Below are positions 11,530 through 56,597 of a stretch of 64,000 nt of DNA, piece by piece. The position numbers and the translations under genes are program-made. The notes beneath the pieces were generated by a model. It had not been told where the DNA came from. It saw nothing but the letters and a program-made list of their open reading frames with translations, and did no database searches. Source of the stretch: Macrostomum lignano (lineage: Eukaryota); the NCBI GenBank assembly GCA_002269645.1, contig NIVC01002635.1:62001-126000 (forward strand), read 5' to 3'. Numbering within the stretch: the stretch's first letter is position 1; every line of letters starts with the position of its first letter.

Positions 11530-14194
11530 CTACTGCTGTGTCTTCTTATTCCCTTTGTGCAGCAGCGAGGTGAGGTACAGGTTCAGCGCCAGGTCGCTGC
11601 CCGCAAGGTTCGCATTGAAGCTGCGCCTGCATTTGGGACACCTGGCCTCTAAAGTGTGTCCCGAGAACTCCGACACCAGAGACTCCTCACCGCACAGCGG
11701 GCACCTGTACATGCATGTCTGCAGACCCTTCAGTGAGGCGAACAGCTTTTCAGCGACGCCCGGTCCGCGCTCTCTGAAGGCGGCTCTCTCGGCCTCAGTC
11801 AGCTGCTCCTCGGTCCAGAACACATCGATGAACTTCATCCTGAGCACGGCTGCGCTCTGCACTCTGAAGAAGCCGCCGTCGCCCCAGCCGGAGCCCCACG
11901 AGTTCATCAGCCTCAGGCTGTGTCTGTCGAAGCTCATCAGCACCACCGCGTGTCCGAACAGCTCAGAGTCTCCCCGAGCTCCGAGTCCACCGGTGAGGTC
12001 GGACTGAGTGAGAATGCCTTCGGGATTCTGCTTGAAGAACTGCCTGAAGCTGCCCCACTCGCTCTTAGTGAGGTGGAACCTCGCCACGACTGGCCGCTTG
12101 GCGATGACGGCGTCCAGCGCGGCTCTCTCATCGACCTCCTTGCACTGCAGCCGGTACTCCGGGCACACTGTCCGCAGCACCTCGACTGTGCGGGCTCTGC
12201 GCTGTCCGAACTGAGTGACGATCTCGTCTCTGAGCTGGAAGAAGTCCGGATATCCGCCGTCCCGACCCACAACCCTGAGCATGCTCAGGTGCATGACGGT
12301 CGCCGACGCGACTGCATAGCAGGTGAGCTCCGACTGTCGCTGCGGCTCGAAGCCCTCGTTGGCCCTGTTGATGTACAGGTCGAGGTCCACGTCGGCCAGC
12401 ACGTCCGACAGCGCGTCCTGCGAGCACACGCAGCTCTTGGCGATGTCGCAGACCTCATCGATGAGGTCGGGGTGATTGATCTGGAAGAACAGTCGGGTCT
12501 CATTGTTGTCGGTGTCGATTGTCCAGCCTTTTCGGATGAACAGGGTTCTGGGGACCTTCTGGGTGGAGACTGTCGAGGCCATGTGGAACATAAATTTAGC
12601 AGGTCGATCCCAGCCACTGTCGAGTGTGCTGTAGAGCCGTCGCGGGTCAGAGATGTCAGTGTCCGTGATGAAGCAGGACACGACCGTCACCCCGAGATTG
12701 TGCAGTTTCTGTCGCATCTCAGTGTCTCGGCTGCCGCTGCTGTCCGCCGGCTCTCCATCAGAAAGGATGAAGAGCAGCTTGAACTCAGTTTTGCGTTTCT
12801 CGCTACAAAAAATATTTTTCGATGTCTCGAGAGCCTCCATCAGCGGGGTGCCTCCGTAGATGAAGGGCTCGATGGTGTCCAGGAGCTCCGTGATTCGCTC
12901 GTCAGTCAGCTCAGCGTCTTCGTTGCAGGAGTGCAGGATTTTCTGAGCTTCATCTGGGGCAAAGACGGACAAAGGAGTCAACTGAGTCAAAGGACTCAAT
13001 GCCCTCAACTCATTCTCCGCTCTCCTTCTTTCAGCTTCTGCTTCTGCTTCTACTTCTGCTTTTACTTCTGTTTCTTTCTGCTTCTTTTTGGCGTTAAGGA
13101 AGTTTTCACATTTGTTCACAACAGCTCTAACTTCGGAGTCCGTCCCCAACAACGGGTCTTCTGACCCCACAAACGAACCAAGAAATCCAGAAGTGACTCT
13201 CGCGGCTTCGCTCGCCCAGTGAAAATTTCGGCACTGCTCAGGCAGATAATCATCAACAACTTTTCGTTTGAATTCCGAGTCGGTTTGCAGAGCGTCCAGA
13301 ATGACGCAGGCAGTTCGCTTGTCTCTTATATTCCTGTCCACCATGTCCGCTGTGGCCCAACTCCGAACTCTCGGCGCTCCACTGGACTCAAGGATGGAGA
13401 GAGCTCGGTCAATGATATCTTGCTTTGAAGAAGATTCTAACCTCTTTATTCGGTCTTCATACTCCTGCTTCTTTCTTCTGGCCTCATCTTCCAGCTCCTG
13501 TTTTTTCCTGTCCAGTTCTTGCTTTCCCCTCTCCAGCTCTTGCTTTTTACGGTCCAGCTCTGGTTTTCTCCTCTCCAGCTCTTCCCTTTTTCTCTGCCCA
13601 GCCTCCAGTGAGGCCAAGATGTCGAACACTGTGGGCTGTGACTCAGCTCCCACGCCGCCCAGGAACACCTGGTTGGTCGGTGACACGTCGTGCTCGACCA
13701 GCTGGTCGGCCACCTGGAAGATGGAGCGGACCCACTTGTTCTTCGATGCGTAGCTGGCCGCGCCCGCTGCCTGCTGGCAGTCGAAGCTGCGCTGCATGGA
13801 GCCGGAGACGTCCAGCAAAGCTCCGGTGAGCACCGACCTCACGTGACGCTCCTGCAGTGTCGGTGGAAAGTTCAGCTTGACATGCAAAACCTTTTAGCTA
13901 CAAATGTGTGTTTAAAATCTGTAGAACATGAAGTAGTGCTCATTTATGTGGTTCATTGTATAATGATATGATTTCAATTCATAAATTCTATAAAGGTGCA
14001 TCCTTTAATTCTATTTTAGCGTCTGATACATAAATAACTTTATTATAAAATATTTGTACTTAGTGAATTTAAGATATAGAAATTATGATAATGAAAAATA
14101 TCTTTCATTCTGTTCAAGAGAGGAAGAACAACCAGTTCATTCTGTTTAATTTTTTCTGAATTTCGGAAAGCAGAAACTTCGTGCAGCTTACCAT
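11530..14194 (-). CDS. Split-VWA / coiled-coil / papain-like (C1A) cysteine protease / Zn-ribbon protein, paralog 1 (~774 aa)
   Basis: Exon 1 coding = ATG 14194-14192; intron 14191-13852 (GTAAGC...CTGCAG); exon 2 13851-11530. MIDAS motifs LLDVSGSM, YGGTPL, FILSDGE. Protease QRQSELTCYA, GHAVVLM, MNSWGSGWGDGGFFRV. Zn ribbon CPLC-x17-CPKC. Confidence 0.85.
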
Positions 14195-14510
14195 TGAGAA
14201 TCCTTTCAATTTTTGGCTCAAGTTGTGGCTTTACTTAAGGAGAACTGGCAGCACTGACTGGAATAATTCAAATTATGTATAAATTCATTATCGCAACAGA
14301 TAGAAAACTGGAATCTTTAATAAAGGCCCAATAGTTTAGGTAAATGGAAAATATTTCTAATTTGCTTTAACAAATAGCATTCAAACGTTGATTTCCTTCC
14401 AGTGAAATTAACGTTTGTTTTATTTAGTTAAAATATCCGGAAAAATTATTTAGAATTTAAAACAGTATCATGCACTGGTTGTGCGAGATTGAGTGAGTGC
14501 TGACCGGGTG

Positions 14511-14790
14511 CGCCTTCACCTCTGCAATGCAGCATCACATCAATCACCTTCACCTCACTAATGCAGCATTGCATCACTCGCATTCACCTCACCAATGCAG
14601 CATCACATCATTCGCTTCCACCTCACTAATGCAGCATTGCATCACTCGCCTTCACCTCACTAATGCAGCATTGCATCACTGCCTTCACCTCACTAATGCA
14701 GCATTGCATCACTGCCTTCACCTCACTAATGCAGCATTGCATCATTCGCCTTCACCTCACTAATGCAGCATTGCATCATTCGCCTTCACC
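14511..14790. repeat. 34-bp minisatellite (CACTAATGCAGCATTGCATCACTCGCCTTCACCT), about 8 degenerate copies
   Basis: Direct observation; the same repeat lies upstream of paralogs 2 and 3. Confidence 0.9.
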
Positions 14791-15929
14791 GCCTTGAAAA
14801 TTGCATTTGATAAAGCTTCTGTTAAGCTTTTAGATTTTTGCGCTTTGATAAACAATTCTGTATGTACATTCGAGTTTTTAGGTCTGGAGTCTTCTTGATA
14901 GCCGATAAAGTTCAGCTTATAATTTCAGGTTTTAATACCGAAATAAATCAAAGCAAGTCTTTTTTGCAGCGCTGTGCTCGGGTGCACTGATGAGCAACCT
15001 CCGGCTCTCAGTCAAGGGTGCCAGGCACTGCACTGCAACACGTTTCTTTCTCTCTGCGCCCCCTAAGCTGCTAACTTGATTGTGCCCCACCCCATTTTCT
15101 CTGCCCTTCTAAGTTGTTTACACACAAGACCTGCGACCGCCCCACTCCCCCACCCCCATTCTGCTGTGATTGGCTGACCGGCCCCCAGCTGTCAACACCC
15201 AGCTGCCTGTGCTCTCTTCTGCCTTCTCATTGGCTGCTGGTTTTCGTGTAATTTTGGACCTTGTTTGAGCTCGTGGGTCTTCAGACCCTGGGGCTAAAAG
15301 TCAATGAACCCAAATATAAGATGTGTGGGCAGCCGGCAGGGCATGTGCCTGCTGATTGTGGGTAATTGCGCGTGTCTGCTCGTTTGCTTCGAGGGTGACC
15401 CTGCATATTGTACGGGACAGTCATAGGGACGGGCTGACCACGTCTCTCGAAGTCATAGAGACGAACGATCAGATTCCGAAGTTAGTCTAGCCAGGGCGAC
15501 TGACTCCATCAAGTGCTCACTGCTCTGAATTTCTTGGGAATAACTGGGAAGCACACGATCGGTTTAACGGCCGCGTCACAACACCAGCAAACTGCGTTTT
15601 CCCAGTAGAAGATACCCGTCAGAAATTGTATTGCGCTTCCGCTGCTACTGATGGTCTTTGCAACATCTGAAACGTCCGAAATGCATAGAGAAATACGTCA
15701 GGGGCCCTGTCTCCGTTTTACCATGTTTTCATTCCACAACAAAATCCAAAAATCTAAATGATAAAAGCAGATAGTATACTTTGTTCCTCACAAAAATGGA
15801 AGGCCGGTAAAGTAGGAATACATTGTCGAAATCTGTACTTTTCTTTTCTTATTTTTTCTTTTTCTTTTCTGAAGAAAAAGAATTTTCTTTAAATCCAGTG
15901 AATGTTTGATTGTCTCTCGGATACTGGAA

Positions 15930-16195
15930 AGTGCTAGTCAGTGCCAGTCAGTGCCAGTCAGTGCCAGTCAGTGTCAGTCAGTGCCAGTCAGAGCCAGTTA
16001 GAGCCAGTCAGTGCCAGTCAGAGCCCGTTAGAGCCAGTCAGTGCCAGTCAGTGCCAGTCAGAGCCAGTCAGTGTCAGTCAGAGCCAGTCAGTGCCAGTTA
16101 GAGCCAGTCAGTGCCAGTCAGAGCCCGTTAGAGCCAGTCAGTGTCAGTCAGAGCCAGTCAGAGCCAGTCAGAGCCAGTCAGTGCCAGTCAGTGCT
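15930..16195. repeat. 10-bp tandem repeat AGTGCCAGTC/AGAGCCAGTC
   Basis: Direct observation. Confidence 0.95.
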
Positions 16196-16582
16196 AATTG
16201 ATAGACTTGGGACACAACACACTGTGATTCGCACGAAAAACTGCAAAAATTACTACTTACAATACAAAAGCGCGATTCTTCTCGGCTTCAGGTACTGAGA
16301 AATAAGCAAAAGAAATACTCTCGTAGATATAAATTTATTTCAGCAAGCCAAAATTGATAAGTTTACAAAAAGAGAAATCCGAAGATATTGAAAATTCTCC
16401 AAATCTGTCAACAAGCAGCCAGCATCTTGCTGCTATTAAAAGATCGCAGTTTATGATCGATATGTGAAAGAGCGAGCAGGTGATGTGCAGGTTCCCATTT
16501 AAGACGCCCAGCCCCCAAGCGTGCGTCCTGAAGGCTCCGACGCGATAGACTGACTCAGTAAGACTGGCAACCTTACTTCCAA

Positions 16583-16740
16583 CTCTGCGGACCCTTCAGC
16601 GAGACGACCAGTCAGTCTCTCAGCGCCCTGTGAACGCGGCTCTGTCGGCCTCAGTCAGCCGCTCCAGAACACATGAATGGAACAAATCCAGGCCGGTACT
16701 CCGGACACTTCCTTCAGCACATTGACTGCCTGAGCTGCAG
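16583..16740 (-). pseudogene. Collapsed relic of a VWA-protease paralog (protease-domain pieces)
   Basis: Pieces match the intact genes: AQAVNVLKEV..PEYR vs ARTVEVLRTVCPEYR, LTEADRAAF vs LTEAERAAF, SLKGPQS vs SLKGLQT, with internal deletions and frameshifts. Confidence 0.75.
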
Positions 16741-16747
16741 ACAGCTA

Positions 16748-17238
16748 GACAGCTGATTATCGCATTGGGAACAGAAGCAGCTGGGAGACAAGGACAGCTG
16801 ATTATCGCATTGGGAACAGAAGCAGCTGGGAGACAAGGACAGCTGATTATCGCATTGGGAAGAGAAGCAGCTGGGAGACAAGGACAGCTGATTATCGCAT
16901 TGGGAACAGAAGCAGCTGGGAGACAAGGACAGCTGATTATCGCATTGGGAAGAGAAGCAGCTGGGAGACAAGGACAGCTGATTATCGCATTGGGAACAGA
17001 AGCAGCTGGGAGACAAGGACAGCTGATTATCACATCGGGAACAGAAGCAGCTGGGAGACAAGGACAGCTGATTATCGCATCGGGAACAGAAGCAGCTGGG
17101 AGACAAGGACAGCTGATTATCGCATCGGGAACAGAAGCAGCTGGGAGACAAGGACAGCTGATTATCGCATCGGGAACAGAAGCAGCTGGGAGACAAGGAC
17201 AGCTGATTATCGCATCGGGAACCGAAGCAGCTGGGAGA
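16748..17238. repeat. 45-bp minisatellite, about 11 copies
   Basis: Unit GACAGCTGATTATCGCATTGGGAACAGAAGCAGCTGGGAGACAAG. Confidence 0.95.
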
Positions 17239-18202
17239 GGAGAAGAGAGGAAGAGAAGAGAGTGACATGAAGATGGGAATACAAAGATCAATCAAAGGCA
17301 TATTTCAACGCTTCTGTTCTTTCACGGAAAAAACTGCAAAAAGTTTTAGACTAAGCCGTCTCAAACCAGTTTCATCTTCTCAAATCCCGAATCGCGCGTA
17401 AGTCGGTCTTGGCTGATGATGAGTAGCCATGGCGCGTTGCAGTTACCAGAGGCGCACAATTCAACCAAAGCGTACCTGTACAGTCTGTTACAGGTAGTTA
17501 CCAAGTACACAGACTGCCTAGAGGCTGCCAAGTTCAGTCTGAACTGGTTAAATTCTCTCCTTTCTAGCTGGATCATCGCAAGGGACTTGAGATGATTAAG
17601 AATTATCAATAATTATGTTAGTAACTACTGAGAGTAGCATGCCAGTCACCTTGCAGCTTCCTTTCTACTAGAATTGTTTAATTTTCATGGTCTCAGCTGC
17701 TCAGATCAGGTGAAAACGGCCTCTGTAACCGGTTTCTCTGGCAGTTGCGCACATCATTAACTGAACTTCCATTTTGGCAAAGAGACAAAAATAGAAATTA
17801 AATCTCTGTGAGCGGTTCGAGCACTGCATTGTGAGGCCAGACGTCTCTCCTCACAAACTGCTTGCTTTCTTATTTAACACTGCGGTGAACCCTTGAAATA
17901 CAAGGGCTGAGAGAACTCTTATTTATGACAGCCACTGACGCAACAAATAAAATATTGCAGTTTTGCCTCTGGGCAATTTGCAGATGATGCGCTTGAGACA
18001 AAAAGGCCTCAGTTTAAACTGAGCCAAGGCTGCGGCCCGCGCTCTCTCTGCGCTCGGTGGCGAGATGGTCAGAGATTTTTCAGCTCTTGCGTTCTCATTG
18101 GATTATGAGAACACAACTTCTGTGCGAGGTGCGGTTTCCAATGAACTGTCCCTGCATTTATTTTGCTCACTCTGTTTTTATCCTCTGTCTGCTATTAAAA
18201 GA

Positions 18203-18337
18203 AGGATAACTGGCTACTCAGGGTCTGGTGGGGCAGCTGATGGCTGGAGATGAGAGTCAGGTGAGCAGATGAGGATAATTGGCTACTCAGGGTCTGGTGG
18301 GGCAGCTGATGGCTGGAGATGAGAGTCAGGTGAGCAG
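18203..18337. repeat. Two copies of the 69-bp unit that is expanded at 34861-52064
   Basis: Same unit and the same unique flanks (gctattaaaaga... and ...aaccaaaa.gtttagaaactggagg) as the large array. Confidence 0.9.
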
Positions 18338-20491: not shown

Positions 20492-21548
20492 TGCAAAACT
20501 TGAAGCAAAAAAAATTTCTCATCAAACTTCTAATGAAATTTCTTTCCAGTTAGAATTTCGTTAGCCCTGGAGTGAGCTTGATTTGTTTTTATATTTAGTC
20601 CACAGCTGCGCACTAGAAAGAGAACTTCAGTTTTGCCTGCAAAATCTGCCAGTATCTCGAATGCACACCTGGCAGGTGCGCACCGCACAGTAAGCTGAAA
20701 CAGCAGAGAAATTTATGAAGCTGGACCATGCTAGCAACTGGGGCTTGAGACAATAGCCAATGACGGTCGCTCCTATGCTATAATTTTGACAGTCTGCGTC
20801 TTCACAATGCTCAGTGTCTTTCGAATAGAATATTGGCTGAGGTGGAAACTGTGCTGAAGCTCAAGGGTCTCACTAACGAGTTCGGAGAGCTAAGAAAACA
20901 TCTTGGCTCGTATGCTCAGGCATTGAGTCTCCCTGCTAAAGGGGCTGCACTCGGTGGCACGTGCTGGCGAACCACAAGACAGCTGGGGCAGCAAAGATAA
21001 GCATTGTGCTCTCGCATGTGTTTTTATCGGAAACTTCGAGCCGAAACAAAGTTTACAATTGTATGAGCCTATAAACAATAGTTAAGTTTACGATTGAAGG
21101 CTTGATGATGGATTTATTGAATAATCATTTATCTACATATTTGGTACAATCATAAAATGGCTTCCGATACTGGGTAATGACACAGGACATTGGGATTTGT
21201 ACAAATACAGGTGGGATACTAAGTGATGATACATCTAAAAGGCATTGGGATTTGAGCTGATACGCATGGGATACTGGGGAATGATGCAAGGCATGGGTAT
21301 GATGGGCATGAGCAGTCGACTACTCATTTTTTCATATTTTAGACATACCTATGTTGTCGATTACAGCCATTAGAGAGCAGGTTTAAAGACCTGATAAATT
21401 GATACCGCAAAAAAGGTTGAGATCATAAAAACATTGTTTTATTTAAAAATAGTCTGTGGATAAATATGTTAATTCTGAAGTAGTCTGAATGTTGCCAATA
21501 ACTCTGTTTCAAGAATTAGCTGCACTAAGCTTCACAAGCTCCACTGCA

Positions 21549-24331
21549 CTACTGCCGTGTCTTCTTATCCCCTTTGTGCAGCAGCGAGGTGAGGTACAGG
21601 TTCAGCGCCAGGTCGCTGCCCGCAAGGTTCGCATCGAAGCTGCGCCTGCATTTGGGACACCTGGCCTTCAGCGTGTGTCCCGCGAACTCCGACACCAGAG
21701 ACTCCCTTTTGCAGAGCGGGCACCTGTACTTGCATGTCTGCAGACCCTTCAAGGACTTAAACAGTCTCTCAGCGACGCCCGGTCCGCGCTCTTTGAAGGC
21801 GGCTCTCTCGGCCTCGGTCAGCTGCTCCTCGGTCCAGAACACATCGATGAACTTCATCCTGAGCACGGCTGCGCTCTGCACTCTGAAGAAGCCGCCGTCG
21901 CCCCAGCCGGAGCCCCACGAGTTCATCAGCCTCAGGCTGTGTCTGTCGAAGCTCATCAGCACCACCGCGTGTCCGAGCAGCTCAGAGTCTCCCCGAGCTC
22001 CGAGTCCACCGGTGAGGTCGGCCTGAGTGAGAATGCCTTCGGGATTCTGCTTGAAGAACTGCATGAAGTTGTCCCTCTCGCTCTTAGTGAGGTGGAACCT
22101 CGCCACGACTGGCCGCTTGGCGATGACGGCGTCCAGCGCGGCTCTCTCATCGACCTCCTTGCACTGCAGCCGGTACTCCGGACACACTGTCCGCAGCACC
22201 TCGACTGTGCGGGCTCTGCACTGTCCGAACTGAGCGACGATCTCGTCTCTGAGCTGGAAGAAGTCCGGATATCCGCCGTCCCGACCCACAACCCTGAGCA
22301 TGCTCAGGTGCATGACGGTCGCCGACGCGACTGCATAGCAGGTGAGCTTCCACTGTCGCTGCGGCTCGAAGCCCTCGTTGGCCCTGTTGATGTACAGGTC
22401 GAGGTCCACGTCGGCCAGCACGTCCGACAGCGCGTCCTGCGAGCACACGCAGCTCTTGGCGATGTCGCAGACCTCATCGATGAGGTCGGGGTGATTGATT
22501 TGGAAGAACAGTCGGGTCTCATTGTTGTCGGTATCGATTTTCCAGCCTTTTCGGATGAACAGGGTTCTGGGGACCTTCTGGGTGGAGACTGTCGAGGCCA
22601 TGTCGAACATAAACTTTGCAGGTCGATCCCAGCCACTGTCGAGTGTGCTGTAGAGCCGTCGCGGGTCAGAGATGTCTGTGTCCGTGATGAAGCAGGACAC
22701 GACCGTCACCCCGAGATTGTGCAGCGCCTGTCGCATCTCAGTGTCTCGGCTGCCGCTGTTGTCCGACGGCGCTCCATCAGAAAGGATGAAGAGCAGCTTG
22801 AACTCAGTTTTGTGTTCCTCACTACAAAAAATATTTTTCGACGTCTCGAGAGCCTCCATCAGCGGGGTGCCTCCGTAGATGAATGGCTCGATGGTGTCGA
22901 TGAGCTCCGTGATTCGCTGGTCAGTCAGCTCAGAGTCTTCGTTGCAGGAGTGCAGGATTTTCTGAGCTTCATGAGGAGCAAAAACAGACGAATGAGTCAG
23001 TGCAATGAGATTTGCAGTGAGATTTTTCGTCAGTGCTCTGAGATCTTCAGCCAGTGCAGTGAGATTTGTACTCAATGGCCTCAGCTCATTCTCCGCTCTC
23101 CTTCTTTCTTCTTCTAATTTGTCGTTAAGGAAGTCTTCACATTTGCTCACAACAGCTCTTACTTCGGAGTCCGTCGCCTTTTTCGACTGTTCTTCAGCCG
23201 CGAACGCGGTCGTTGCTGCAGCCGCCCCCATCACAAGAGGGAGCAAACCCCCAGTCAGCAATCCACCGAGTACTCCAGCTCCGACCGCAGCGAATTTCGT
23301 GGCGGGACTGTGAGCGACTTCACTCGCGACGCGATAAGTTCGGCACTCTTCAGGCAGAAACTCATAAACAACTTTTCGTTTGAATTCCGAGTCGGTTTGC
23401 AGAGCGTCCAGAATGACGCAGGCAGTTCGCTTGTCTCTTATATTCCTGTCCACCATGTCCGCTGTGGCCCAACTCCGAACTCTCGGCGCTCCACTGGACT
23501 CAAGGATGGAGAGAGCTCGGTCAATGATATCTTGCTTTGAAGAAGATTCTAACCTCTTTATTCGGTCTTCATACTCCTGCTTCTTTCTTCTGGCCTCATC
23601 TTCCAGCTCCTGTTTTTTCCTGTCCAGTTCTTGCTTTCCCCTCTCCAGCTCTTGCTTTTTACGGTCCAGCTCTGGTTTTCTCCTCTCCAGCTCTTTCTGC
23701 CCAGCCTCCAGTGAGGCCAGGATGTCGAACACTGTGGGCTGTGACTCAGCTCCCACGCCGCCCAGGAACACCTGGTTGGTCGGTGACACGTCGTGCTCGA
23801 CCAGCTGGTCGGCCACCTGGAAGATGGAGCGGACCCACTTGTTCTTCGATGCGTAGCTGGCCGCGCCCGCTGCCTGCTGGCGGTCGAAGCTGCGCTGCAT
23901 GGAGCCGGACACGTCCAGCAGAGCTCCGGTGAGCACCGACCTCACGTGACGCTCCTGCAGTGTCGGTGGAAAGTTCAGCTTGACATGCAAAACCTTTTAG
24001 CTACAAAATGTGTGTTTAAAATCTGTAGAACATGAAGTAGTGCTCATTTATGTGGTTCATTGTATAATGATATGATTTCAATTCATAAATTCCATAAAGG
24101 TGCTTCTGAACCCATTAATTATTTCTTGTATTCTTGTACTTTTAATTCTATTTTAGCATCTGATACACAAATATCTTTATTATAAAATATTTGTTTTTAG
24201 TGAGTTTAAAATATAGAAATTATAAGAATGAAAACTATATTTCATTCTGTTCAAGAGAGGAAGAACAACCAGTTCATTCTGTTTAATTTTTTCTAAATTT
24301 CGGAAAGCAGAAACTTCGTGCAGCTTACCAT
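21549..24331 (-). CDS. Split-VWA / coiled-coil / C1A protease / Zn-ribbon protein, paralog 2 (~802 aa)
   Basis: ATG 24331-24329; intron 24328-23955; exon 2 23954-21549. Same motifs (QRQWKLTCYA, GHAVVLM, NSWG, CPLC...CPKC). The insert carries an extra hydrophobic Gly-rich segment. Confidence 0.85.
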
Positions 24332-32543: not shown

Positions 32544-32550
32544 ACAGCTA

Positions 32551-46800: not shown

Positions 46801-49800
46801 GTGAGCAGATGAGGATAATTGGCTACTCAGGGTCTGGTGGGGCAGCTGATGGCTGGAGATGAGAGTCAGGTGAGCAGATGAGGATAATTGGCTACTCAGG
46901 GTCTGGTGGGGCAGCTGATGGCTGAGATGAGGATAATTGGCTACTCAGGGTCTGGTGGGGCAGCTGATGGCTGGAGATGAGAGTCAGGTGAGCAGATGAG
47001 GATAATTGGCTACTCAGGGTCTGGTGGGGCAGCTGATGGCTGGAGATGAGAGTCAGGTGAGCAGATGAGGATAATTGGCTACTCAGGGTCTGGTGGGGCA
47101 GCTGATGGCTGGAGATGAGAGTCAGGTGAGCAGATGAGGATAATTGGCTACTCAGGGTCTGGTGGGGCAGCTGATGGCTGGAGATGAGAGTCAGGTGAGC
47201 AGATGAGGATAATTGGCTACTCAGGGTCTGGTGGGGCAGCTGATGGCTGGAGATGAGAGTCAGGTGAGCAGATGAGGATAATTGGCTACTCAGGGTCTGG
47301 TGGGGCAGCTGATGGCTGGAGATGAGAGTCAGGTGAGCAGATGAGGATAATTGGCTACTCAGGGTCTGGTGGGGCAGCTGATGGCTGGAGATGAGAGTCA
47401 GGTGAGCAGATGAGGATAATTGGCTACTCAGGGTCTGGTGGGGCAGCTGATGGCTGGAGATGAGAGTCAGGTGAGCAGATGAGGATAATTGGCTACTCAG
47501 GGTCTGGTGGGGCAGCTGATGGCTGGAGATGAGAGTCAGGTGAGCAGATGAGGATAATTGGCTACTCAGGGTCTGGTGGGGCAGCTGATGGCTGGAGATG
47601 AGAGTCAGGTGAGCAGATGAGGATAATTGGCTACTCAGGGTCTGGTGGGGCAGCTGATGGCTGGAGATGAGAGTCAGGTGAGCAGATGAGGATAATTGGC
47701 TACTCAGGGTCTGGTGGGGCAGCTGATGAGAGTCAGGAGCAGATGAGGATAATTGGCTACTCAGGGTCTGGTGGGGCAGCTGATGGCTGGAGATGAGAGT
47801 CAGGTGAGCAGATGAGGATAATTGGCTACTCAGGGTCTGGTGGGGCAGCTGATGGCGGAGATGAGGATAATTGGCTACTCAGGGTCTGGTGGGGCAGCTG
47901 ATGGCTGGAGATGAGAGTCAGGTGAGCAGATGAGGATAATTGGCTACTCAGGGTCTGGTGGGGCAGCTGATGGCTGGAGATGAGAGTCAGGTGAGCAGAT
48001 GAGGATAATTGGCTACTCAGGGTCTGGTGGGGCAGCTGATGGCTGGAGATGAGAGTCAGGTGAGCAGATGAGGATAATTGGCTACTCAGGGTCTGGTGGG
48101 GCAGCTGATGGCTGGAGATGAGAGTCAGGTGAGCAGATGAGGATAATTGGCTACTCAGGGTCTGGTGGGGCAGCTGATGGCTGGAGATGAGAGTCAGGTG
48201 AGCAGATGAGGATAATTGGCTACTCAGGGTCTGGTGGGGCAGCTGATGGCTGGAGATGAGAGTCAGGTGAGCAGATGAGGATAATTGGCTACTCAGGGTC
48301 TGGTGGGGCAGCTGATGGCTGGAGATGAGAGTCAGGTGAGCAGATGAGGATAATTGGCTACTCAGGGTCTGGTGGGGCAGCTGATGGCGGAGATGAGGAT
48401 AATTGGCTACTCAGGGTCTGGTGGGGCAGCTGATGGCTGGAGATGAGAGTCAGGTGAGCAGATGAGGATAATTGGCTACTCAGGGTCTGGTGGGGCAGCT
48501 GATGGCTGGAGATGAGAGTCAGGTGAGCAGATGAGGATAATTGGCTACTCAGGGTCTGGTGGGGCAGCTGATGGCAGGAGATGAGGATAATTGGCTACTC
48601 AGGGTCTGGTGGGGCAGCTGATGGCTGGAGATGAGAGTCAGGTGAGCAGATGAGGATAATTGGCTACTCAGGGTCTGGTGGGGCAGCTGATGGCTGGAGA
48701 TGAGAGTCAGGTGAGCAGATGAGGATAATTGGCTACTCAGGGTCTGGTGGGGCAGCTGATGGCTGGAGATGAGAGTCAGGTGAGCAGATGAGGATAATTG
48801 GCTACTCAGGGTCTGGTGGGGCAGCTGATGGCTGGAGATGAGAGTCAGGTGAGCAGATGAGGATAATTGGCTACTCAGGGTCTGGTGGGGCAGCTGATGG
48901 CTGGAGATGAGAGTCAGGTGAGCAGATGAGGATAATTGGCTACTCAGGGTCTGGTGGGGCAGCTGATGGCTGGAGATGAGAGTCAGGTGAGCAGATGAGG
49001 ATAATTGGCTACTCAGGGTCTGGTGGGGCAGCTGATGGCTGGAGATGAGAGTCAGGTGAGCAGATGAGGATAATTGGCTACTCAGGGTCTGGTGGGGCAG
49101 CTGATGGCTGGAGATGAGAGTCAGGTGAGCAGATGAGGATAATTGGCTACTCAGGGTCTGGTGGGGCAGCTGATGGCTGGAGATGAGAGTCAGGTGAGCA
49201 GATGAGGATAATTGGCTACTCAGGGTCTGGTGGGGCAGCTGATGGCTGGAGATGAGAGTCAGGTGAGCAGATGAGGATAATTGGCTACTCAGGGTCTGGT
49301 GGGGCAGCTGATGGCTGGAGATGAGAGTCAGGTGAGCAGATGAGGATAATTGGCTACTCAGGGTCTGGTGGGGCAGCTGATGGCTGGAGATGAGAGTCAG
49401 GTGAGCAGATGAGGATAATTGGCTACTCAGGGTCTGGTGGGGCAGCTGATGGCTGGAGATGAGAGTCAGGTGAGCAGATGAGGATAATTGGCTACTCAGG
49501 GTCTGGTGGGGCAGCTGATGGCTGGAGATGAGAGTCAGGTGAGCAGATGAGGATAATTGGCTACTCAGGGTCTGGTGGGGCAGCTGATGGCTGGAGATGA
49601 GAGTCAGGTGAGCAGATGAGGATAATTGGCTACTCAGGGTCTGGTGGGGCAGCTGATGGCTGGAGATGAGAGTCAGGTGAGCAGATGAGGATAATTGGCT
49701 ACTCAGGGTCTGGTGGGGCAGCTGATGGCTGGAGATGAGAGTCAGGTGAGCAGATGAGGATAATTGGCTACTCAGGGTCTGGTGGGGCAGCTGATGGCTG

Positions 49801-52064
49801 GAGATGAGAGTCAGGTGAGCAGATGAGGATAATTGGCTACTCAGGGTCTGGTGGGGCAGCTGATGGCTGGAGATGAGAGTCAGGTGAGCAGATGAGGATA
49901 ATTGGCTACTCAGGGTCTGGTGGGGCAGCTGATGGCTGGAGATGAGAGTCAGGTGAGCAGATGAGGATAATTGGCTACTCAGGGTCTGGTGGGGCAGCTG
50001 ATGGCTGGAGATGAGAGTCAGGTGAGCAGATGAGGATAATTGGCTACTCAGGGTCTGGTGGGGCAGCTGATGGCTGGAGATGAGAGTCAGGTGAGCAGAT
50101 GAGGATAATTGGCTACTCAGGGTCTGGTGGGGCAGCTGATGGCGGAGATGAGGATAATTGGCTACTCAGGGTCTGGTGGGGCAGCTGATGGCTGGAGATG
50201 AGAGTCAGGTGAGCAGATGAGGATAATTGGCTACTCAGGGTCTGGTGGGGCAGCTGATGGCTGGAGATGAGAGTCAGGTGAGCAGATGAGGATAATTGGC
50301 TACTCAGGGTCTGGTGGGGCAGCTGATGGCTGGAGATGAGAGTCAGGTGAGCAGATGAGGATAATTGGCTACTCAGGGTCTGGTGGGGCAGCTGATGGCT
50401 GGAGATGAGAGTCAGGTGAGCAGATGAGGATAATTGGCTACTCAGGGTCTGGTGGGGCAGCTGATGGCTGGAGATGAGAGTCAGGTGAGCAGATGAGGAT
50501 AATTGGCTACTCAGGGTCTGGTGGGGCAGCTGATGGCTGGAGATGAGAGTCAGGTGAGCAGATGAGGATAATTGGCTACTCAGGGTCTGGTGGGGCAGCT
50601 GATGGCTGGAGATGAGAGTCAGGTGAGCAGATGAGGATAATTGGCTACTCAGGGTCTGGTGGGGCAGCTGATGGGCGGAGATGAGGATAATTGGCTACTC
50701 AGGGTCTGGTGGGGCAGCTGATGGCTGGAGATGAGAGTCAGGTGAGCAGATGAGGATAATTGGCTACTCAGGGTCTGGTGGGGCAGCTGATGGCTGGAGA
50801 TGAGAGTCAGGTGAGCAGATGAGGATAATTGGCTACTCAGGGTCTGGTGGGGCAGCTGATGGCTGGAGATGAGAGTCAGGTGAGCAGATGAGGATAATTG
50901 GCTACTCAGGGTCTGGTGGGGCAGCTGATGGCTGGAGATGAGAGTCAGGTGAGCAGATGAGGATAATTGGCTACTCAGGGTCTGGTGGGGCAGCTGATGG
51001 CTGGAGATGAGAGTCAGGTGAGCAGATGAGGATAATTGGCTACTCAGGGTCTGGTGGGGCAGCTGATGGCTGGAGATGAGAGTCAGGTGAGCAGATGAGG
51101 ATAATTGGCTACTCAGGGTCTGGTGGGGCAGCTGATGGCTGGAGATGAGAGTCAGGTGAGCAGATGAGGATAATTGGCTACTCAGGGTCTGGTGGGGCAG
51201 CTGATGGCTGGAGATGAGAGTCAGGTGAGCAGATGAGGATAATTGGCTACTCAGGGTCTGGTGGGGCAGCTGATGGCTGGAGATGAGAGTCAGGTGAGCA
51301 GATGAGGATAATTGGCTACTCAGGGTCTGGTGGGGCAGCTGATGGCTGGAGATGAGAGTCAGGTGAGCAGATGAGGATAATTGGCTACTCAGGGTCTGGT
51401 GGGGCAGCTGATGGCTGGAGATGAGAGTCAGGTGAGCAGATGAGGATAATTGGCTACTCAGGGTCTGGTGGGGCAGCTGATGGCTGGAGATGAGAGTCAG
51501 GTGAGCAGATGAGGATAATTGGCTACTCAGGGTCTGGTGGGGCAGCTGATGGCTGGAGATGAGAGTCAGGTGAGCAGATGAGGATAATTGGCTACTCAGG
51601 GTCTGGTGGGGCAGCTGATGGCTGGAGATGAGAGTCAGGTGAGCAGATGAGGATAATTGGCTACTCAGGGTCTGGTGGGGCAGCTGATGGCTGGAGATGA
51701 GAGTCAGGTGAGCAGATGAGGATAATTGGCTACTCAGGGTCTGGTGGGGCAGCTGATGGCTGGAGATGAGAGTCAGGTGAGCAGATGAGGATAATTGGCT
51801 ACTCAGGGTCTGGTGGGGCAGCTGATGGCTGGAGATGAGTCAGGTGAGCAGATGAGGATAATTGGCTACTCAGGGTCTGGTGGGGCAGCTGATGGCTGGA
51901 GATGAGAGTCAGGTGAGCAGATGAGGATAATTGGCTACTCAGGGTCTGGTGGGGCAGCTGATGGCTGGAGATGAGAGTCAGGTGAGCAGATGAGGATAAT
52001 TGGCTACTCAGGGTCTGGTGGGGCAGCTGATGGCTGGAGATGAGAGTCAGGTGAGCAGAGGATA
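34861..52064. repeat. 69-bp satellite array, about 250 copies (~17.2 kb)
   Basis: Unit GAGGATAATTGGCTACTCAGGGTCTGGTGGGGCAGCTGATGGCTGGAGATGAGAGTCAGGTGAGCAGAT; period checked at 41111 and 41180. Scattered ~50-bp deletion variants. Confidence 0.98.
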
Positions 52065-53421: not shown

Positions 53422-53577
53422 TGGGTAATGATGCAACGCATTGGGATTTGGGCTGATACGCATGGGATATTGGGTAATGATGCAACGCATTGGGATTTGG
53501 GCTGATACGCATGGGATATTGGGTAATGATGCAATGCATTGGGATTTGGGCTGATACGCATGGGATATTGGGTAATG
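53422..53577. repeat. 49-bp tandem repeat, ~3 copies
   Basis: Unit starts at 53422, 53471, 53520 and 53569; a degenerate counterpart lies at ~21170-21300. Confidence 0.9.
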
Positions 53578-53794
53578 GTGCAAGACCTTTAAGCAGTTAA
53601 TTACTCGTTTTTTTCATATTTTATACATACTGAACTTATGTTGCAGGTTAAAACAATTAGAGGGCAGGTTAAAAAACCCTGATAAACTGATACCACAAAA
53701 TAAGCTTGGCATCATACAAAAACGTTGCAAGTTTCCAGTTTGGGGAGCAACTATGCGAACTCTTATTTAGTCAGATTTTGTCAATAACTCTGTG

Positions 53795-56597
53795 TCACCA
53801 ATTCGCTGCACAAAGCTCTAGAAGCTCCACTGCACTACTGCTGTGTCTTCTTTGTGCAGCAGCTGCTGTCCCTTTGTGCAGCAGCGAGGTGAGGTACAGG
53901 TTCAGCGCCAGGTTGCTGCCCGCCAGGTTCGCATCGAAGCTGCCCAAACACCTGGGACACCTGGCCTCTAAAGTGTGTCCCAAGAACTCCGACACCAGAG
54001 ACTCCTCACCGCACAGCGGGCACCTGTACATGCATGTCTGCAGACCCTTCAGTGAGGCAAACAGCTTTTCAGCGACGCCCGGTCCGCGCTCTTTGAAGGC
54101 GGCTCTCTCGGCCTCAGTCAGCTGCTCCTCGGTCCAGAACACATCGATGAACTTCATCCTGAGCACGGCTGCGCTCTGCACTCTGAAGAAGCCGCCGTCG
54201 CCCCAGCCGGAGCCCCACGAGTTCATCAGCCTCAGGCTGTGTCTGTCGAAGCTCATCAGCACCACCGCGTGTCCGAGCAGCTCAGAGTCTCCCTGAGCTC
54301 CGAGTCCACCGGTGAGGTCGGCCTGAGTGAGAATGCCTTCGGGATTCTGCTTGAAGAACTGCTTGAAGCTTCCCCACTCGCTCTTAGTGAGGTAGAACCT
54401 CGCCACGACTGGCCGCTTGGCGATGACGGCGTCCAGCGCGGCTCTCTCATCGACCTCCTTGCACTGCAGCCGGTACTCCGGACACACTGTCCGCAGCACC
54501 TCGACTGTGCGGGCTCTGCGCTGTCCGAACTGAGCGACGATCTCGTCTCTGAGCTGGAAGAAGTCCGGATATCCGCCGTCCCGACCCACAACCCTGAGCA
54601 TGCTCAGGTGCATGGCGGTCGCCGACGCGACTGCATAGCAGGTGAGCTCCGACTGTCGCTGCGGCTCGAAGCCCTCGTTGGCCCTGTTGATGTACAGGTC
54701 GAGGTCCACGTCGGCCAGCACGTCCGACAGCGCGTCCTGCGAGCACACGCAGCTCTTGGCGATGTCGCAGACCTCATCGATGAGGTCGGGGTGATTGATC
54801 TGGAAGAACAGTCGGGTCTCATTGTTGTCGGTGTCGATTGTCCAACCCTTTCGGATAAACAGGGTTCTGGGAACCTTCTGGGTGGAGACTGTCGAGGCCA
54901 TGTGGAACATAAATTCAGCAGGTCGATCCCAGCCGCTGTCGATAGTGCTGTAGAGCCGTCGCGGGTCAGAGATGTCTGTGTCCGTGATGAAGCAGGACAC
55001 GACCGTCACCCCGAGGTTGTGCAGTTCCTGTCGCATCTCAGTGTCACTGCTGCCGCTGCTGTCCGCCGGCTCTCCATCAGAAAGGATGAAGAGCAGCTTG
55101 AACTCAGTTTTGTGTTCCTCGCTACAAAAAATATTTTTCGACTTTTCGAGAGCCTCCATCAGCGGGGTGCCTCCGTAGATGAAGGGCTCGATGGTGTCCA
55201 GGAGCTCCGTGATTCGCTGGTCAGTCAGCTCAGCGTCTTCGTTACAGGAGCGCAGGATTTTCTGAGCTTCATCTGGGGCAAAGACTGACAAAGGAGTCAG
55301 TGCAGTGAGATTTGCAGTGAGATTTTTCGTCAGTGCTCTGAGATGTTCAGCCAGTGCAGTGAGATTTCTACTCAATTGCCTCAGCTCATTCTCCGCTCTC
55401 ATACTTTCTGCCTCTTCTTGACGTCGAAATTTTGCTTTAAGGTAGTCTTCACATTTGTTCACAACATCTTTTAATTTAGATTCCGTCCAATACAATGGCT
55501 CCTTAGCATTGGACATATAACCATAATAAAATACAGAAGTGGATCTCGCGGCTTCACTCTTCACGCGATAAGTTCGGCACTCTTCAGGCAGAAAATCATT
55601 AACAACAATTTGTTTAAATTCAGAGTCGTTTTTCAGAGCGTCCAGAAACACGCAGGCTGTTTTTTTGTCTCTTATATTCCTGTCCACCATGTTCTTCGGC
55701 GCCCAAAGTCGAACTCTCGGTGCGCCACTGGACTCAAGGATGGAGAGAGCTCGGTTAATGATATATTGCTTTGAAGAAGATTCTAGCATTTCTGCGAGTA
55801 TTCGGTCTTCATACTCCTGCTTCTTTCTTCTGGCCTCATCTTCCAGCTCTTGCTTTCTGTTGTCCAGCTCTTGCTTTATCATCTCCAGCTCCTGCTTTTT
55901 GCTCTCCAGCTCTTCCCGTTTTCTCTGCCCAGCCTCCAGTGAGGCCAAGATGTCGAACACTTCAGGCTGTGACTCGGCTCCCACGCCGCCCAGGAACACC
56001 TGGTTGGTCGGTGACACGTCGTGCTCGACCAGCTGGTCGGCCACCTGGAAGATGGAGCGGACCCACTTGTTCTTCGATGCGTAGCTGGCCGCGCCCGCTG
56101 CCTGCTGGCAGTCGAAGCTGCGCTGCATGGAGCCGGAGACGTCCAGCAGAGCTCCGGTGAGCACCGACCTCACGTGACGCTCCTGCAGTAGCGGTGAAAA
56201 GTTCAGCTTTAAGCTACATACACTAAAAATTGCGGTTACATCAAGCTCAGCCTTAGATGCACAACTTTGTAGCTAAAATGTGTGTTCAGTATCTGAGATT
56301 GGTTTAGAATATGAAAAATTGATTCGCTCGTTGTATAACTATATGATTGCAATTCATAAACTCGAAAAAGGTGCTTCTGAACCCATTTCCTTTTTCTTAT
56401 AATGTTATATTTATTATCTCGTTTAAATATCTGACACAAATTATTTTTGTTGCAATATAAATACACTTAATGAATTTGGAATATATAGGAGTTATGATAA
56501 TGAAAAATAATTTATCCTTTTCCAGAGAGGAAGAACAGCGAGTGAATTCTGGACACAGCATTTTTTTGGAAAGCAGAAATTTCCAGCAGCTTACCAT
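53795..56597 (-). CDS. Split-VWA / coiled-coil / C1A protease / Zn-ribbon protein, paralog 3 (~796 aa)
   Basis: ATG 56597-56595; intron 56594-56183; exon 2 56182-53795. Catalytic and MIDAS motifs intact (CPLC...CPRC). The C-terminal tail is extended by a late frameshift. Confidence 0.85.

What the first reader, a model, noticed from the sequence alone, without database searches (positions are those of the whole stretch)
11530..56597. Tandem family of cytosolic split-VWA + papain protease + Zn-ribbon proteins
Seen: three intact paralogs. The VWA MIDAS motifs (DVSGS; GGT; SDG) are separated by a ~250-aa insertion and followed by a complete C1A-type Gln/Cys-His-Asn site and a CxxC-x17-CxxC ribbon. 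There is no signal peptide. Established: animal C1A cathepsins are normally secreted or lysosomal zymogens with an I29-type prodomain, and VWA MIDAS binds a divalent cation and a ligand acidic residue. Inference: a cytosolic ligand-gated protease in which the VWA/insert module replaces the propeptide as regulator. I do not recognise a characterised protein with this architecture.
Basis: partly seen in the sequence, partly recalled or inferred. Interest (0 to 1): 0.85.

Follow-up and report, generated by a model that had tools for sequence, protein, structure and literature searches.

The report
Flatworm VWA-papain protease gene cluster
Three tandem flatworm genes encode an uncharacterised intracellular protein that joins a metal-dependent binding domain to a papain-type protease. 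Its bacterial relatives carry immune-type domains in place of the protease, so it is probably an innate-immunity or cell-death protease that nobody has yet studied.

Summary
Three intact paralogs (about 774, 802 and 796 aa; 84-91% identical) lie on the minus strand of a repeat-rich stretch of the Macrostomum lignano genome. Each has a one-codon first exon (ATG) and a single large coding exon.

Each protein has four parts:
- a VWA domain with a complete MIDAS (DVSGS, T, SDG);
- a ~240-aa helical insert that splits the VWA;
- a divergent papain-family (C1) domain with Gln/Cys/His/Asn, an NSWG motif and a GxxGGYP motif;
- a CPxC-x17-CPxC zinc ribbon.

There is no signal peptide, no propeptide, and two of papain's three disulfides (Cys22-Cys63, Cys153-Cys200) have lost a cysteine.

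The family is large (1653 clusters at 50% identity) and occurs in eight invertebrate phyla. Every source name is automatic, and I found no paper on it.

New here: the VWA module is homologous (hhalign E 7e-25) to stand-alone bacterial proteins that carry TIR or EAD7 where the protease sits. Rare animal members add Death, TRADD-N/GT4 or WD40 domains.

Best reading: a single-chain sensor-effector protease of an immune or cell-death type. Gating by the VWA remains inference. It is a new variant of a known kind, of moderately high interest.

The parts
11530..13851 (-). Copy 1, coding exon 2 (773 codons plus stop). Encodes VWA-insert-VWA-C1-Zn ribbon.
   Evidence: ORF and translation. The acceptor CTGCAG|GAG puts the first exon-2 base at 13851. 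The sequence is 100% identical to residues 37-809 of UniRef A0A1I8I0H8 from Macrostomum lignano.
14192..14194 (-). Copy 1, proposed start codon at the end of exon 1. It is followed by a GTAAGC donor; the intron is 13852-14191.
   Evidence: The ATG|GTAAGC motif is conserved in all three copies. The model is inferred and there is no RNA evidence for it.
17367..17474 (-). Alternative distal first exon (...EKMKL|) used by the deposited chimeric gene model. Its donor, GTTTGA, is weak.
   Evidence: tblastn of the N-terminus of P0121 gives 100% identity here, and a 95% copy lies at 33943-34053.
13621..13839 (-). Copy 1, VWA N-terminal part: beta1 with the DVSGS MIDAS loop (13798-13812), alpha1, beta2 and beta3.
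   Evidence: AF2 secondary structure E7-14, H39-53, E61-67, E75-77. D14, S16 and S18 are at least 90% conserved.
12904..13620 (-). Copy 1, helical insert (aa 78-316). It has two long antiparallel helices, a helical head, and a variable aromatic or hydrophobic tip (aa 213-236).
   Evidence: AF2 helices 78-139 and 238-283, with a low-pLDDT tip. It has the highest column entropy in the family, 2.56 bits. It has no PDB fold match.
12424..12903 (-). Copy 1, VWA C-terminal part (MIDAS Thr335 in GGT, SDG364-366) plus the conserved post-VWA extension (aa 401-476).
   Evidence: for the motifs. hhalign to the bacterial VWA-TIR/EAD7 family gives probability 99.6% and E 6.6e-25 over aa 324-470. BLASTP gives 34% identity.
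11812..12390 (-). Copy 1, papain-family (C1-like) peptidase domain. Gln506 is at 12334-12336, Cys511 at 12319-12321, His634 at 11950-11952 and Asn650 at 11902-11904.
   Evidence: phmmer to papain and DPP1. Foldseek to papain, ervatamin and xylellain. hhalign to papain E 4.7e-6, including the GxxGGYP motif. Codons verified.
11611..11715 (-). Copy 1, zinc ribbon C717-P-L-C720 ... C738-P-K-C741.
   Evidence: The four Cys and two Pro are invariant in 82 sequences. There are sub-threshold Zn_ribbon hits. AF2 models short beta-strands at 714-746.
11560..11610 (-). Copy 1, C-terminal helix DLALNLYLTSL. This is the most conserved segment of the family.
   Evidence: Entropy 0.83 bits. AF2 helix 752-762.
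21549..23954 (-). Copy 2, coding exon 2 (801 codons plus stop). The ATG is at 24329-24331. The insert tip is expanded to a 35-aa Gly/Ala/Leu hydrophobic segment, and the nearly invariant Trp599 is replaced by Arg.
53795..56182 (-). Copy 3, coding exon 2 (795 codons plus stop). The ATG is at 56595-56597. The C-terminal tail after LHKG differs from the other copies.
61931..62380 (-). Truncated, divergent fourth copy. It covers only the first ~90 aa of the VWA (DASNS motif, 39% identity). A smaller piece lies at 61525-61671.
   Evidence: tblastn and hmmsearch of the six-frame translation.

Best explanation
These are three tandem copies of a gene for an intracellular, single-chain sensor-effector cysteine protease. 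It belongs to a widespread but unstudied invertebrate family.

Shown:
- The N-terminal module is a VWA domain with a complete metal-ion-dependent adhesion site.
- The VWA is interrupted after strand beta3 by a helical stalk-and-head insert. The tip of that insert is the most variable part of the protein.
- The C-terminal module is a divergent papain-family peptidase with an intact Gln/Cys/His/Asn set, followed by a long helix, a zinc ribbon and a strongly conserved terminal helix.

Inferred mechanism:
- The VWA/MIDAS, possibly together with the variable insert tip, binds an acidic residue or carboxylate of a ligand protein, either foreign or a danger signal. Alternatively it drives self-assembly.
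- As in integrin I domains and complement factor B/C2, that event is relayed through the C-terminal VWA helix and the short, highly conserved linker to the fused protease.
- The protease then cleaves host or invader substrates as an immune or cell-death output.

The module logic appears to be inherited from bacteria. There the same VWA module is fused to TIR domains or to the adaptor domain EAD7 in place of the protease.
For: (1) The domains and catalytic residues are intact and conserved.
- MIDAS residues, Gln506, Cys511, His634, Asn650 and the four zinc-ribbon Cys are invariant or at least 90% conserved in 82 sequences.
- AF2 models reach pLDDT 83 and 87.
- Foldseek matches papain-family enzymes and whole VWA domains, complement C2a among them.
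- hhalign to papain gives E 4.7e-6.

(2) An intracellular location is likely.
- There is no signal peptide.
- Two of papain's three disulfides lack a cysteine.
- There is a zinc ribbon.

(3) The VWA module is shared with bacterial proteins, and the effector is swapped.
- hhalign against the bacterial family gives probability 99.6% and E 6.6e-25.
- The homology ends exactly where the effector begins.
- At least 148 bacterial relatives carry TIR or EAD7 at that position.
- The two bacterial genes inspected stand alone, with unrelated neighbours and no MoxR partner.
- In one locus the neighbours are other TIR and TIR-STALD proteins.

(4) Some animal members carry apoptosis or immunity adaptor domains.
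- One has two N-terminal Death domains. It is a trans-spliced Hydra mRNA found in two independent sequencing runs.
- Acropora models carry GT4-conflict with or without TRADD-N.
- One member carries WD40 repeats.

(5) The evolutionary pattern is typical of immune genes.
- Tandem clusters occur in several genomes, judged from many hits on the same contigs.
- Named members come from Cnidaria, Platyhelminthes, Annelida, Nemertea, Mollusca, Echinodermata, Nematoda and Tardigrada. No vertebrate appears among the roughly 15 named hits.
- The insert tip is hypervariable.
- In this window there is purifying selection on the VWA (omega 0.1-0.3). The protease-coding part is homogenised by gene conversion: about 2 synonymous differences where 15-26 are expected, P at most 3e-5.
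Against: - No experiment or expression data exist for the flatworm genes.
- The Pfam hits of the three window proteins to VWA, Peptidase_C1 and zinc ribbon are all below the gathering scores.
- Fusions to Death, TRADD-N, GT4 or WD40 domains are rare: 4 of about 270 proteins inspected. The Acropora fusions could be merged gene models.
- The immune role of the bacterial VWA-TIR proteins is itself only inferred. They match PADLOC models only through the TIR part.
- The Gln-to-Cys spacing is one residue shorter than in papain. About 20 residues are missing between the Cys helix and the GxxGG motif, so activity is not guaranteed.
- Allosteric gating could not be examined because no model coordinates are available.
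Confidence: 0.5

Rival explanations
1. A housekeeping cytosolic peptidase. The VWA serves only as a constitutive docking or oligomerisation domain, as in Rpn10 or the Ku-type VWA, and there is no immune role. The protease would trim peptides or remove a protein modifier.
For: Cytosolic papain-family enzymes without propeptides exist: bleomycin hydrolase appears among the Foldseek matches. Most family members are stand-alone proteins with no adaptor domain. The core is strongly conserved across phyla.
Against: A core housekeeping enzyme should not be patchily distributed or tandemly amplified. The VWA module's relatives carry TIR or EAD7. Death-domain fusions exist. The insert tip is hypervariable.
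Confidence: 0.2
2. A self-processing protein. The papain-like domain acts mainly in cis, cutting its own chain to release or unmask the VWA/insert or the zinc-ribbon tail. The released part, not the protease, would be the functional entity. CLCA proteins behave this way: a protease domain plus a VWA, with self-cleavage.
For: The architecture pairs a protease with a VWA in one chain, as in CLCA. That comparison rests on my own knowledge and was not tested here. The linker at aa 477-500 and the C-terminal helix are unusually conserved, as expected for a cis-substrate or a plug.
Against: No conserved cleavage motif was identified. In the bacterial relatives the equivalent position holds TIR, which acts in trans or on a small molecule.
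Confidence: 0.15
3. A membrane-associated or unconventionally secreted adhesive protease. The hydrophobic insert tip anchors the protein in a membrane, and the VWA binds an extracellular or organellar ligand.
For: The insert tip is aromatic and hydrophobic across the family. In copy 2 it is expanded to a 35-residue Gly/Ala/Leu segment long enough to span a membrane.
Against: There is no signal peptide. A zinc ribbon and many free cysteines are present. Two of papain's three disulfides lack a cysteine. In most members the hydrophobic tip is only about 10 residues long.
Confidence: 0.08
4. In this flatworm the three copies are recent, functionless duplicates decaying in a satellite- and retrotransposon-rich region.
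For: The copies lie in a ~10-kb tandem unit full of minisatellites. A gypsy element insertion and a 17-kb satellite expansion sit between copies 2 and 3. Overall dN/dS is about 0.5. Copy 2 has lost a nearly invariant Trp, and copy 3 has an altered C-terminal tail. A truncated fourth copy lies nearby.
Against: All three ORFs of about 2.3-2.4 kb are intact and keep every catalytic, MIDAS and zinc ligand. The splice signals are conserved. The VWA and linker show omega 0.0-0.3.
Confidence: 0.07

Closest known systems
Papain-family (MEROPS C1A) cysteine peptidases: papain, ervatamins, cathepsins L/K/V, xylellain
   Same: They share the fold and catalytic apparatus. Cys sits at the N-terminus of a helix, His is on a beta-strand, Asn-Ser-Trp-Gly follows, and the GxNGG-type motif appears here as GRDGGYP. 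Evidence: Foldseek E 1e-4 with TM up to 0.56, and hhalign E 4.7e-6.
   Different: There is no signal peptide and no I29 propeptide. Two of papain's three disulfides lack a cysteine. The Gln-to-Cys spacing is one residue shorter. About 20 residues are deleted after the Cys helix. Tyr replaces Trp after the catalytic Cys. The domain is fused to a VWA and a zinc ribbon. The window proteins score just below Pfam's Peptidase_C1 threshold (17.3-19.6 against 20.7 bits), although some family members pass it.
Complement factor B and C2 (VWA followed by a protease, used in immunity)
   Same: The logic and domain order are the same: a MIDAS-bearing VWA lies N-terminal to a protease in one chain. In factor B the MIDAS binds the C-terminal carboxylate of C3b, and the protease works only in that complex (my own knowledge). 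The VWA of C2a is among the Foldseek matches.
   Different: Those proteins use a trypsin-like serine protease, are secreted, carry CCP modules and have no insert in the VWA. No sequence relationship beyond the VWA fold is shown. This is an analogy of mechanism, not membership.
Bacterial stand-alone VWA-TIR and VWA-EAD7 proteins (uncharacterised), and the vWA-effector components of the conflict systems described by Kaur et al. 2020/2021 (PMC7159879, PMC8195603)
   Same: The VWA module, including its post-VWA extension, is truly homologous (34% identity; hhalign probability 99.6%, E 6.6e-25). The C-terminal effector position is the same. EAD7, Death, TRADD-N and GT4-conflict are domains of that literature.
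   Different: The bacterial proteins have about 35 residues where the animal proteins have a 150-250-aa insert. They carry TIR or EAD7 instead of the C1 peptidase and zinc ribbon. The two inspected have no MoxR ATPase partner, so they are not the published ternary systems. The papers searched do not describe the VWA-C1-zinc-ribbon architecture.
Bleomycin hydrolase (C1B)
   Same: It is a cytosolic papain-family peptidase with no propeptide. It appears among the weaker Foldseek matches.
   Different: It has no VWA and no zinc ribbon, and it forms a self-compartmentalising hexamer. The family here matches C1A enzymes better.
Death-fold-recruited proteases (caspases, MALT1 paracaspase)
   Same: At least one family member, a Hydra mRNA, places two Death domains in front of the protease-bearing chain. 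That is the arrangement used to recruit caspase-type proteases into signalling complexes.
   Different: The protease fold is different (clan CA papain-like, not clan CD caspase-like). The three flatworm proteins have no Death domain.

Membership tests
von Willebrand factor type A (VWA) domain with MIDAS | A Rossmann-like alpha/beta fold with six beta-strands and flanking helices | tested here: met
   AF2 models have pLDDT above 90 in the core. Foldseek aligns 160-180 columns to CMG2, TRAP, integrin I domains and VWF A3 at probability 0.98-1.0, although E-values are only 0.01-0.05. A family profile hits the TRAP VWA at E 1.3e-4. Nineteen of 38 family members hit Pfam VWA at E below 1e-4. The window proteins themselves are below threshold.
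von Willebrand factor type A (VWA) domain with MIDAS | MIDAS residues DxSxS, Thr and Asp in the correct loops | tested here: met
   DVSGS (aa 14-18) follows beta1. T335 precedes helix 337-348. D365 lies in SDG at the end of beta4. All are at least 90% conserved.
von Willebrand factor type A (VWA) domain with MIDAS | Binding of a divalent cation and an acidic ligand | not testable with these tools
   This needs biochemistry.
Peptidase family C1 (papain family), subfamily C1A | Catalytic Gln, Cys, His and Asn in papain order, with Cys at a helix N-terminus | tested here: met
   Q506, C511 (start of helix 511-525), H634 (strand 632-641) and N650-S-W-G are conserved in the family. His, Asn and Trp align to papain His159, Asn175 and Trp177. 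The Cys-helix region was matched by fold only, not by a sequence alignment.
Peptidase family C1 (papain family), subfamily C1A | Score above the curated Pfam Peptidase_C1 threshold | tested here: inconclusive
   The window proteins score 17.3-19.6 bits against a 20.7 cut-off. Relatives P0141 (23.7 bits) and P0065 (21.4 bits) pass, and the best member reaches E 8e-8.
Peptidase family C1 (papain family), subfamily C1A | Secretory zymogen organisation: signal peptide, I29 propeptide and three conserved disulfides | tested here: not met
   There is no signal peptide, and the VWA C-terminal helix leads directly into the mature domain. In the hhalign alignment, papain Cys63 aligns to Arg and Cys153 to Asp; Cys22 corresponds to Leu/Gly by eye. 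The Cys56-Cys95 pair was not examined. The protein is therefore a papain-fold, C1-like peptidase but not a classical C1A cathepsin.
Peptidase family C1 (papain family), subfamily C1A | Three-dimensional Cys-His-Asn geometry and peptidase activity | not testable with these tools
   Model coordinates are not returned. Activity needs an assay.
[quoted passage not shown] 2020) | A vWA-effector protein encoded next to a MoxR AAA+ ATPase and a third (VMAP or iSTAND) component | tested here: not met
   The two bacterial relatives inspected stand alone among unrelated genes. The flatworm genes are flanked only by satellites and retroelement fragments. The resemblance is limited to the arrangement of a vWA followed by a swappable C-terminal effector.
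Zinc ribbon | Two CxxC knuckles on short beta-hairpins | tested here: met
   CPxC-x17-CPxC is invariant. AF2 models short strands at 714-746. Pfam zinc-ribbon hits are only sub-threshold. Metal binding was not tested.

The most novel reading that the evidence does not exclude
This may be a previously unrecognised arm of invertebrate innate immunity or regulated cell death. A bacterial VWA sensor module, acquired by an early animal, was coupled to a papain-type protease. The MIDAS and the hypervariable insert tip would recognise a pathogen-derived or danger ligand and switch on the protease. In effect this would be an intracellular, cysteine-protease counterpart of the complement factor B/C2 principle, used in place of or alongside caspases.
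Probability: 0.3. Interest if true: 0.85.

Novelty: new variant of a known kind. Interest (0 to 1): 0.62.

Why it matters
If the reading is right, many invertebrate phyla share an unstudied intracellular protease. These include corals, hydroids, flatworms, annelids, nemerteans, molluscs, echinoderms and some nematodes and tardigrades. Its regulatory module comes from the same pool as bacterial TIR-bearing proteins. That would add a papain-family enzyme to the short list of proteases wired into immune or cell-death signalling, and one more link between bacterial conflict systems and animal immunity. It would also give a tractable case of VWA/MIDAS-to-enzyme coupling inside the cell. Macrostomum lignano and Hydra are both genetically manipulable, so the hypothesis can be tested directly. 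Practically, the deposited flatworm gene model for copy 1 is a 3511-aa chimera named 'ribonuclease H', which hides the gene.

Tried and rejected
- Pfam on the three proteins gave only sub-threshold hits. By themselves these do not establish the domains, so profile, fold and family-level evidence were needed.
- PADLOC gave nothing meaningful for the flatworm protein.
- Rfam found no RNA families in the window.
- A scan of viral contigs found no relatives, so an origin in giant viruses is not supported.
- A scan of 185,579 prokaryotic species genomes found only VWA-TIR-type relatives and none with the protease pattern. The full architecture was therefore not found in prokaryotes, within the limits of the two peptide patterns used.
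- I looked for a MoxR partner or a conserved operon around two bacterial relatives and found none.
- I looked for model coordinates, to measure triad geometry and to ask whether the insert covers the active site. None are provided.
- The helical insert has no PDB fold match.
- Literature searches for the architecture, for the UniProt accession and for M. lignano reports found nothing specific.
- A look-up of P0012 found no contig on record.
- Long plus-strand ORFs overlapping the genes (for example 11920-13164 and 21489-23117) were set aside as antisense artefacts of GC-rich coding sequence.

Full report
**What is in the window**

The window is eukaryotic and rich in repeats. It holds Ty3/gypsy pol fragments at 7.3-8.8 kb and 25.1-29.2 kb, several minisatellites, and a 17-kb array of a 69-bp satellite at 35.0-52.1 kb.

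Three long minus-strand ORFs lie at 11530-13887, 21549-23990 and 53795-56173. They are 89-91% identical in alignment.

No ORF has an ATG before the DVSGS motif. Each contains a conserved CTGCAG|GAG acceptor, and 340-415 nt upstream lies a conserved TCTCAATG|GTAAGC. This gives a two-exon model in which exon 1 contributes only the ATG:
- Copy 1: ATG 14192-14194, exon 2 from 13851.
- Copy 2: ATG 24329-24331, exon 2 from 23954.
- Copy 3: ATG 56595-56597, exon 2 from 56182.

**Source organism and the deposited gene model**

Copy 1 is 100% identical to residues 37-809 of UniRef A0A1I8I0H8. That entry is a 3511-aa protein named 'ribonuclease H' from the flatworm Macrostomum lignano. Its other parts map to retroelement and coiled-coil ORFs elsewhere in the window. 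The window is therefore M. lignano, and the deposited model is a chimera.

The deposited model uses a distal exon at 17367-17474 with a weak GTTTGA donor. With either first exon the protein begins just before VWA strand beta1 and has no signal peptide.

**The duplication**

The duplicated unit is about 10 kb. It comprises the gene, then 34-bp, 10-bp, 45-bp and 69-bp satellites, then an AGAGG satellite. Unit 2 has been stretched to 32 kb by a gypsy insertion and by satellite expansion.

A fourth, truncated and divergent copy (first ~90 aa, 39% identity) lies at 61931-62380.

**Domains**

Pfam hits of the window proteins to VWA, Peptidase_C1 and zinc ribbon are all below threshold. The domain calls therefore rest on stronger tests.

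- An AlphaFold2 model built on an 82-sequence alignment has mean pLDDT 83 and pTM 0.69.
- A second model of residues 1-500 has pLDDT 87.
- In both, the VWA core is beta1 (7-14, ending in DVSGS), alpha1, beta2 (61-67), beta3 (75-77), then the helix after GGT335, beta4 (357-364, ending in SDG) and beta5 (388-395).
- Foldseek aligns this model to complete VWA domains over 160-180 columns at probability 0.98-1.0. The matches include CMG2, TRAP, integrin I domains, VWF A3 and complement C2a.
- A family profile hits the TRAP VWA by sequence.

Between beta3 and the Thr-bearing helix lies an all-helical insert (aa 78-316). It has two long helices (78-139 and 238-283), a helical head and a low-confidence tip. 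It has no PDB counterpart. The flatworm proteins carry extra coiled-coil length here. In other species the insert is about 150 aa.

The protease domain (aa ~488-680) was tested in three ways:
- It matches papain, ervatamins, xylellain and cathepsins by fold.
- It matches papain and DPP1 by sequence over the His-Asn region.
- It matches papain in a profile alignment of 122 columns at E 4.7e-6. That alignment also pairs papain's GCNGGYP with GRDGGYP.

Cys511 opens helix 511-525, His634 lies in strand 632-641, and Asn650-Ser-Trp-Gly follows. In the hhalign alignment, papain Cys63 aligns to Arg and Cys153 to Asp. Reading the motif by eye, Cys22 corresponds to Leu/Gly. So two of papain's three disulfides lack a cysteine; the Cys56-Cys95 pair was not examined.

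A long helix, an invariant CPxC-x17-CPxC zinc ribbon and a very conserved terminal helix complete the chain. All motif codons were verified.

**The family**

A word-indexed search found 358 relatives at 42-50% identity over the full length. All are 'uncharacterized'.

An exhaustive profile search found 1653 cluster representatives at E below 1e-3, of which 419 are below 1e-30.

Named members come from eight phyla:

| Phylum | Named genera |
|---|---|
| Cnidaria | Acropora, Montipora, Dendronephthya, Hydractinia |
| Platyhelminthes | Macrostomum |
| Annelida | Owenia |
| Nemertea | Tubulanus |
| Mollusca | Mytilus, Mya |
| Echinodermata | Holothuria |
| Nematoda | Panagrolaimus |
| Tardigrada | Paramacrobiotus |

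Several genomes hold many paralogs on one contig. Where context could be read, the gene is a single uninterrupted ORF in gene-poor eukaryotic DNA.

I found no viral relatives, no prokaryotic genome with the protease pattern, and no paper describing the architecture.

**What points to function**

The scan of prokaryotic genomes recovered proteins that share the VWA module but end in a TIR domain.

- A search seeded with one of them found at least 148 bacterial relatives. Most are VWA-TIR, some are VWA-EAD7, and some have unassigned C-termini.
- The profile-profile comparison of the animal and bacterial families gives probability 99.6% and E 6.6e-25. It covers animal residues 324-470 and bacterial residues 112-257.
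- That span is the second half of the VWA plus a conserved extension. The homology stops exactly where the effector begins.
- The N-terminal LxGxLVDVSGSM is also shared.
- The bacteria have about 35 residues where the animals have the large insert.
- The two bacterial genes inspected stand alone without a MoxR partner. In one locus the neighbours are other TIR proteins.

Among animal members, rare fusions add further domains:
- Two Death domains in P0141. This is a 2.9-kb contig from two independent runs. Its first 19 nt are the 3' end of the Hydra SL-B1 spliced leader, so it is a mature trans-spliced mRNA.
- GT4-conflict with or without TRADD-N in Acropora models.
- WD40 repeats in one member.

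EAD7, TRADD-N and GT4-conflict are domains defined in the conflict-system papers PMC7159879 and PMC8195603. Those papers also report bacterial homologs of the Death domain. The second paper mentions cnidarian DED-TRADD-N proteins ending in 'a vWA domain', but neither describes the protease.

**Evolution within the window**

- Overall dN/dS among the three copies is about 0.5.
- The VWA halves and the linker show 0.0-0.3. The insert shows 0.5-0.65.
- The protease region has almost no synonymous differences: about 2 where 15-26 are expected, P at most 3e-5. This indicates gene conversion, while 7-10 amino-acid differences persist there, two of them next to the catalytic Cys in copy 2.
- Across the family, the insert tip is the most variable segment (2.56 bits). 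The post-VWA extension, the linker and the C-terminal helix are the most conserved (0.83-0.90 bits).
- The tip is aromatic and hydrophobic. In copy 2 it is expanded to a 35-residue Gly/Ala/Leu stretch.

**Interpretation**

Shown:
- The gene family is real, conserved, probably intracellular and uncharacterised.
- It has an intact MIDAS VWA, a papain-family catalytic set and a zinc ribbon.
- Its VWA module is homologous to bacterial proteins that carry TIR or EAD7 in the effector position.

Inferred:
- It is a sensor-effector protease of an immune or cell-death type.
- The VWA, perhaps with the variable tip, binds a ligand or nucleates assembly, and passes that event to the protease through the C-terminal VWA helix and the conserved linker.
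- This would resemble integrin I domains and complement factor B/C2 (established knowledge, not tested here).

The idea that the insert blocks the active site could not be examined. Rivals are a housekeeping peptidase, a self-processing protein, a membrane-associated form, and decaying duplicates.

**Verdict**

This is a new variant of a known kind: a VWA-coupled protease, or equivalently a conflict-type VWA-effector protein. The genes themselves are already present in databases under automatic names. Interest is 0.62. It would be higher if a ligand-switched immune protease were demonstrated.

Noticed in passing
window 35046-52059: A 17-kb tandem array of a 69-bp satellite with higher-order 138/207-bp periods and strong GC skew (+0.52). 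Short blocks of the same satellite lie at 18203-18337 and 34863-35052, so it expanded inside one duplicated unit.
   Followed up: partly
window 14511-14790, about 24.4-24.75 kb, and 56911-57668: A 34-bp minisatellite (CCTTCACCTCACTAATGCAGCATTGCATCACTCG) sits about 300-400 bp upstream of the proposed first exon of all three gene copies. Copy number differs: about 8 upstream of copy 1 and about 22 upstream of copy 3. It could be part of the promoter region.
   Followed up: no
window 25097-29212 (minus strand) and 7272-8774 (plus strand): Ty3/gypsy-type pol ORFs (RT, RNase H, integrase). The first lies between copy 2 and its upstream satellites, at a position that is uninterrupted in unit 1 (14615/14681 corresponds to 24749/29421).
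   Followed up: partly
window 5593-6654 (minus strand) and 59762-61180 (plus strand): Two related ORFs encode coiled-coil-like proteins (42% identical to each other by way of the chimeric database model). The second contains a 42-bp in-frame repeat at 60707-60994. They have no Pfam family and unknown function.
   Followed up: no
window 1-17474 (minus strand): The public protein UniRef A0A1I8I0H8 ('ribonuclease H', 3511 aa, Macrostomum lignano) is a chimeric gene model. It strings together a distal exon, copy 1 of the VWA-protease gene (reading past its stop codon), retroelement pieces and the coiled-coil ORF.
   Followed up: yes
window 61931-62380 and 61525-61671 (minus strand): Remnants of an older, divergent paralog (39% identity). 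They keep only the first VWA strands, with a DASNS motif, followed by unrelated sequence.
   Followed up: partly
L002 5647-10387 (Lysobacterales MAG): The bacterial VWA-TIR gene lies beside a nucleotidyltransferase with a TIR-like tail and a TIR-STALD (SLOG) protein. This looks like a small cluster of TIR-bearing, defence-type genes.
   Followed up: partly
window 12319-12336 (copy 1) and the equivalent position in copy 2: Copy 2 differs from copies 1 and 3 at the two residues just before the catalytic Cys region (QRQSELTC in copies 1 and 3, QRQWKLTC in copy 2), in a stretch that is otherwise homogenised by gene conversion. This may reflect diversification of substrate binding, but there are too few sites to test.
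   Followed up: no
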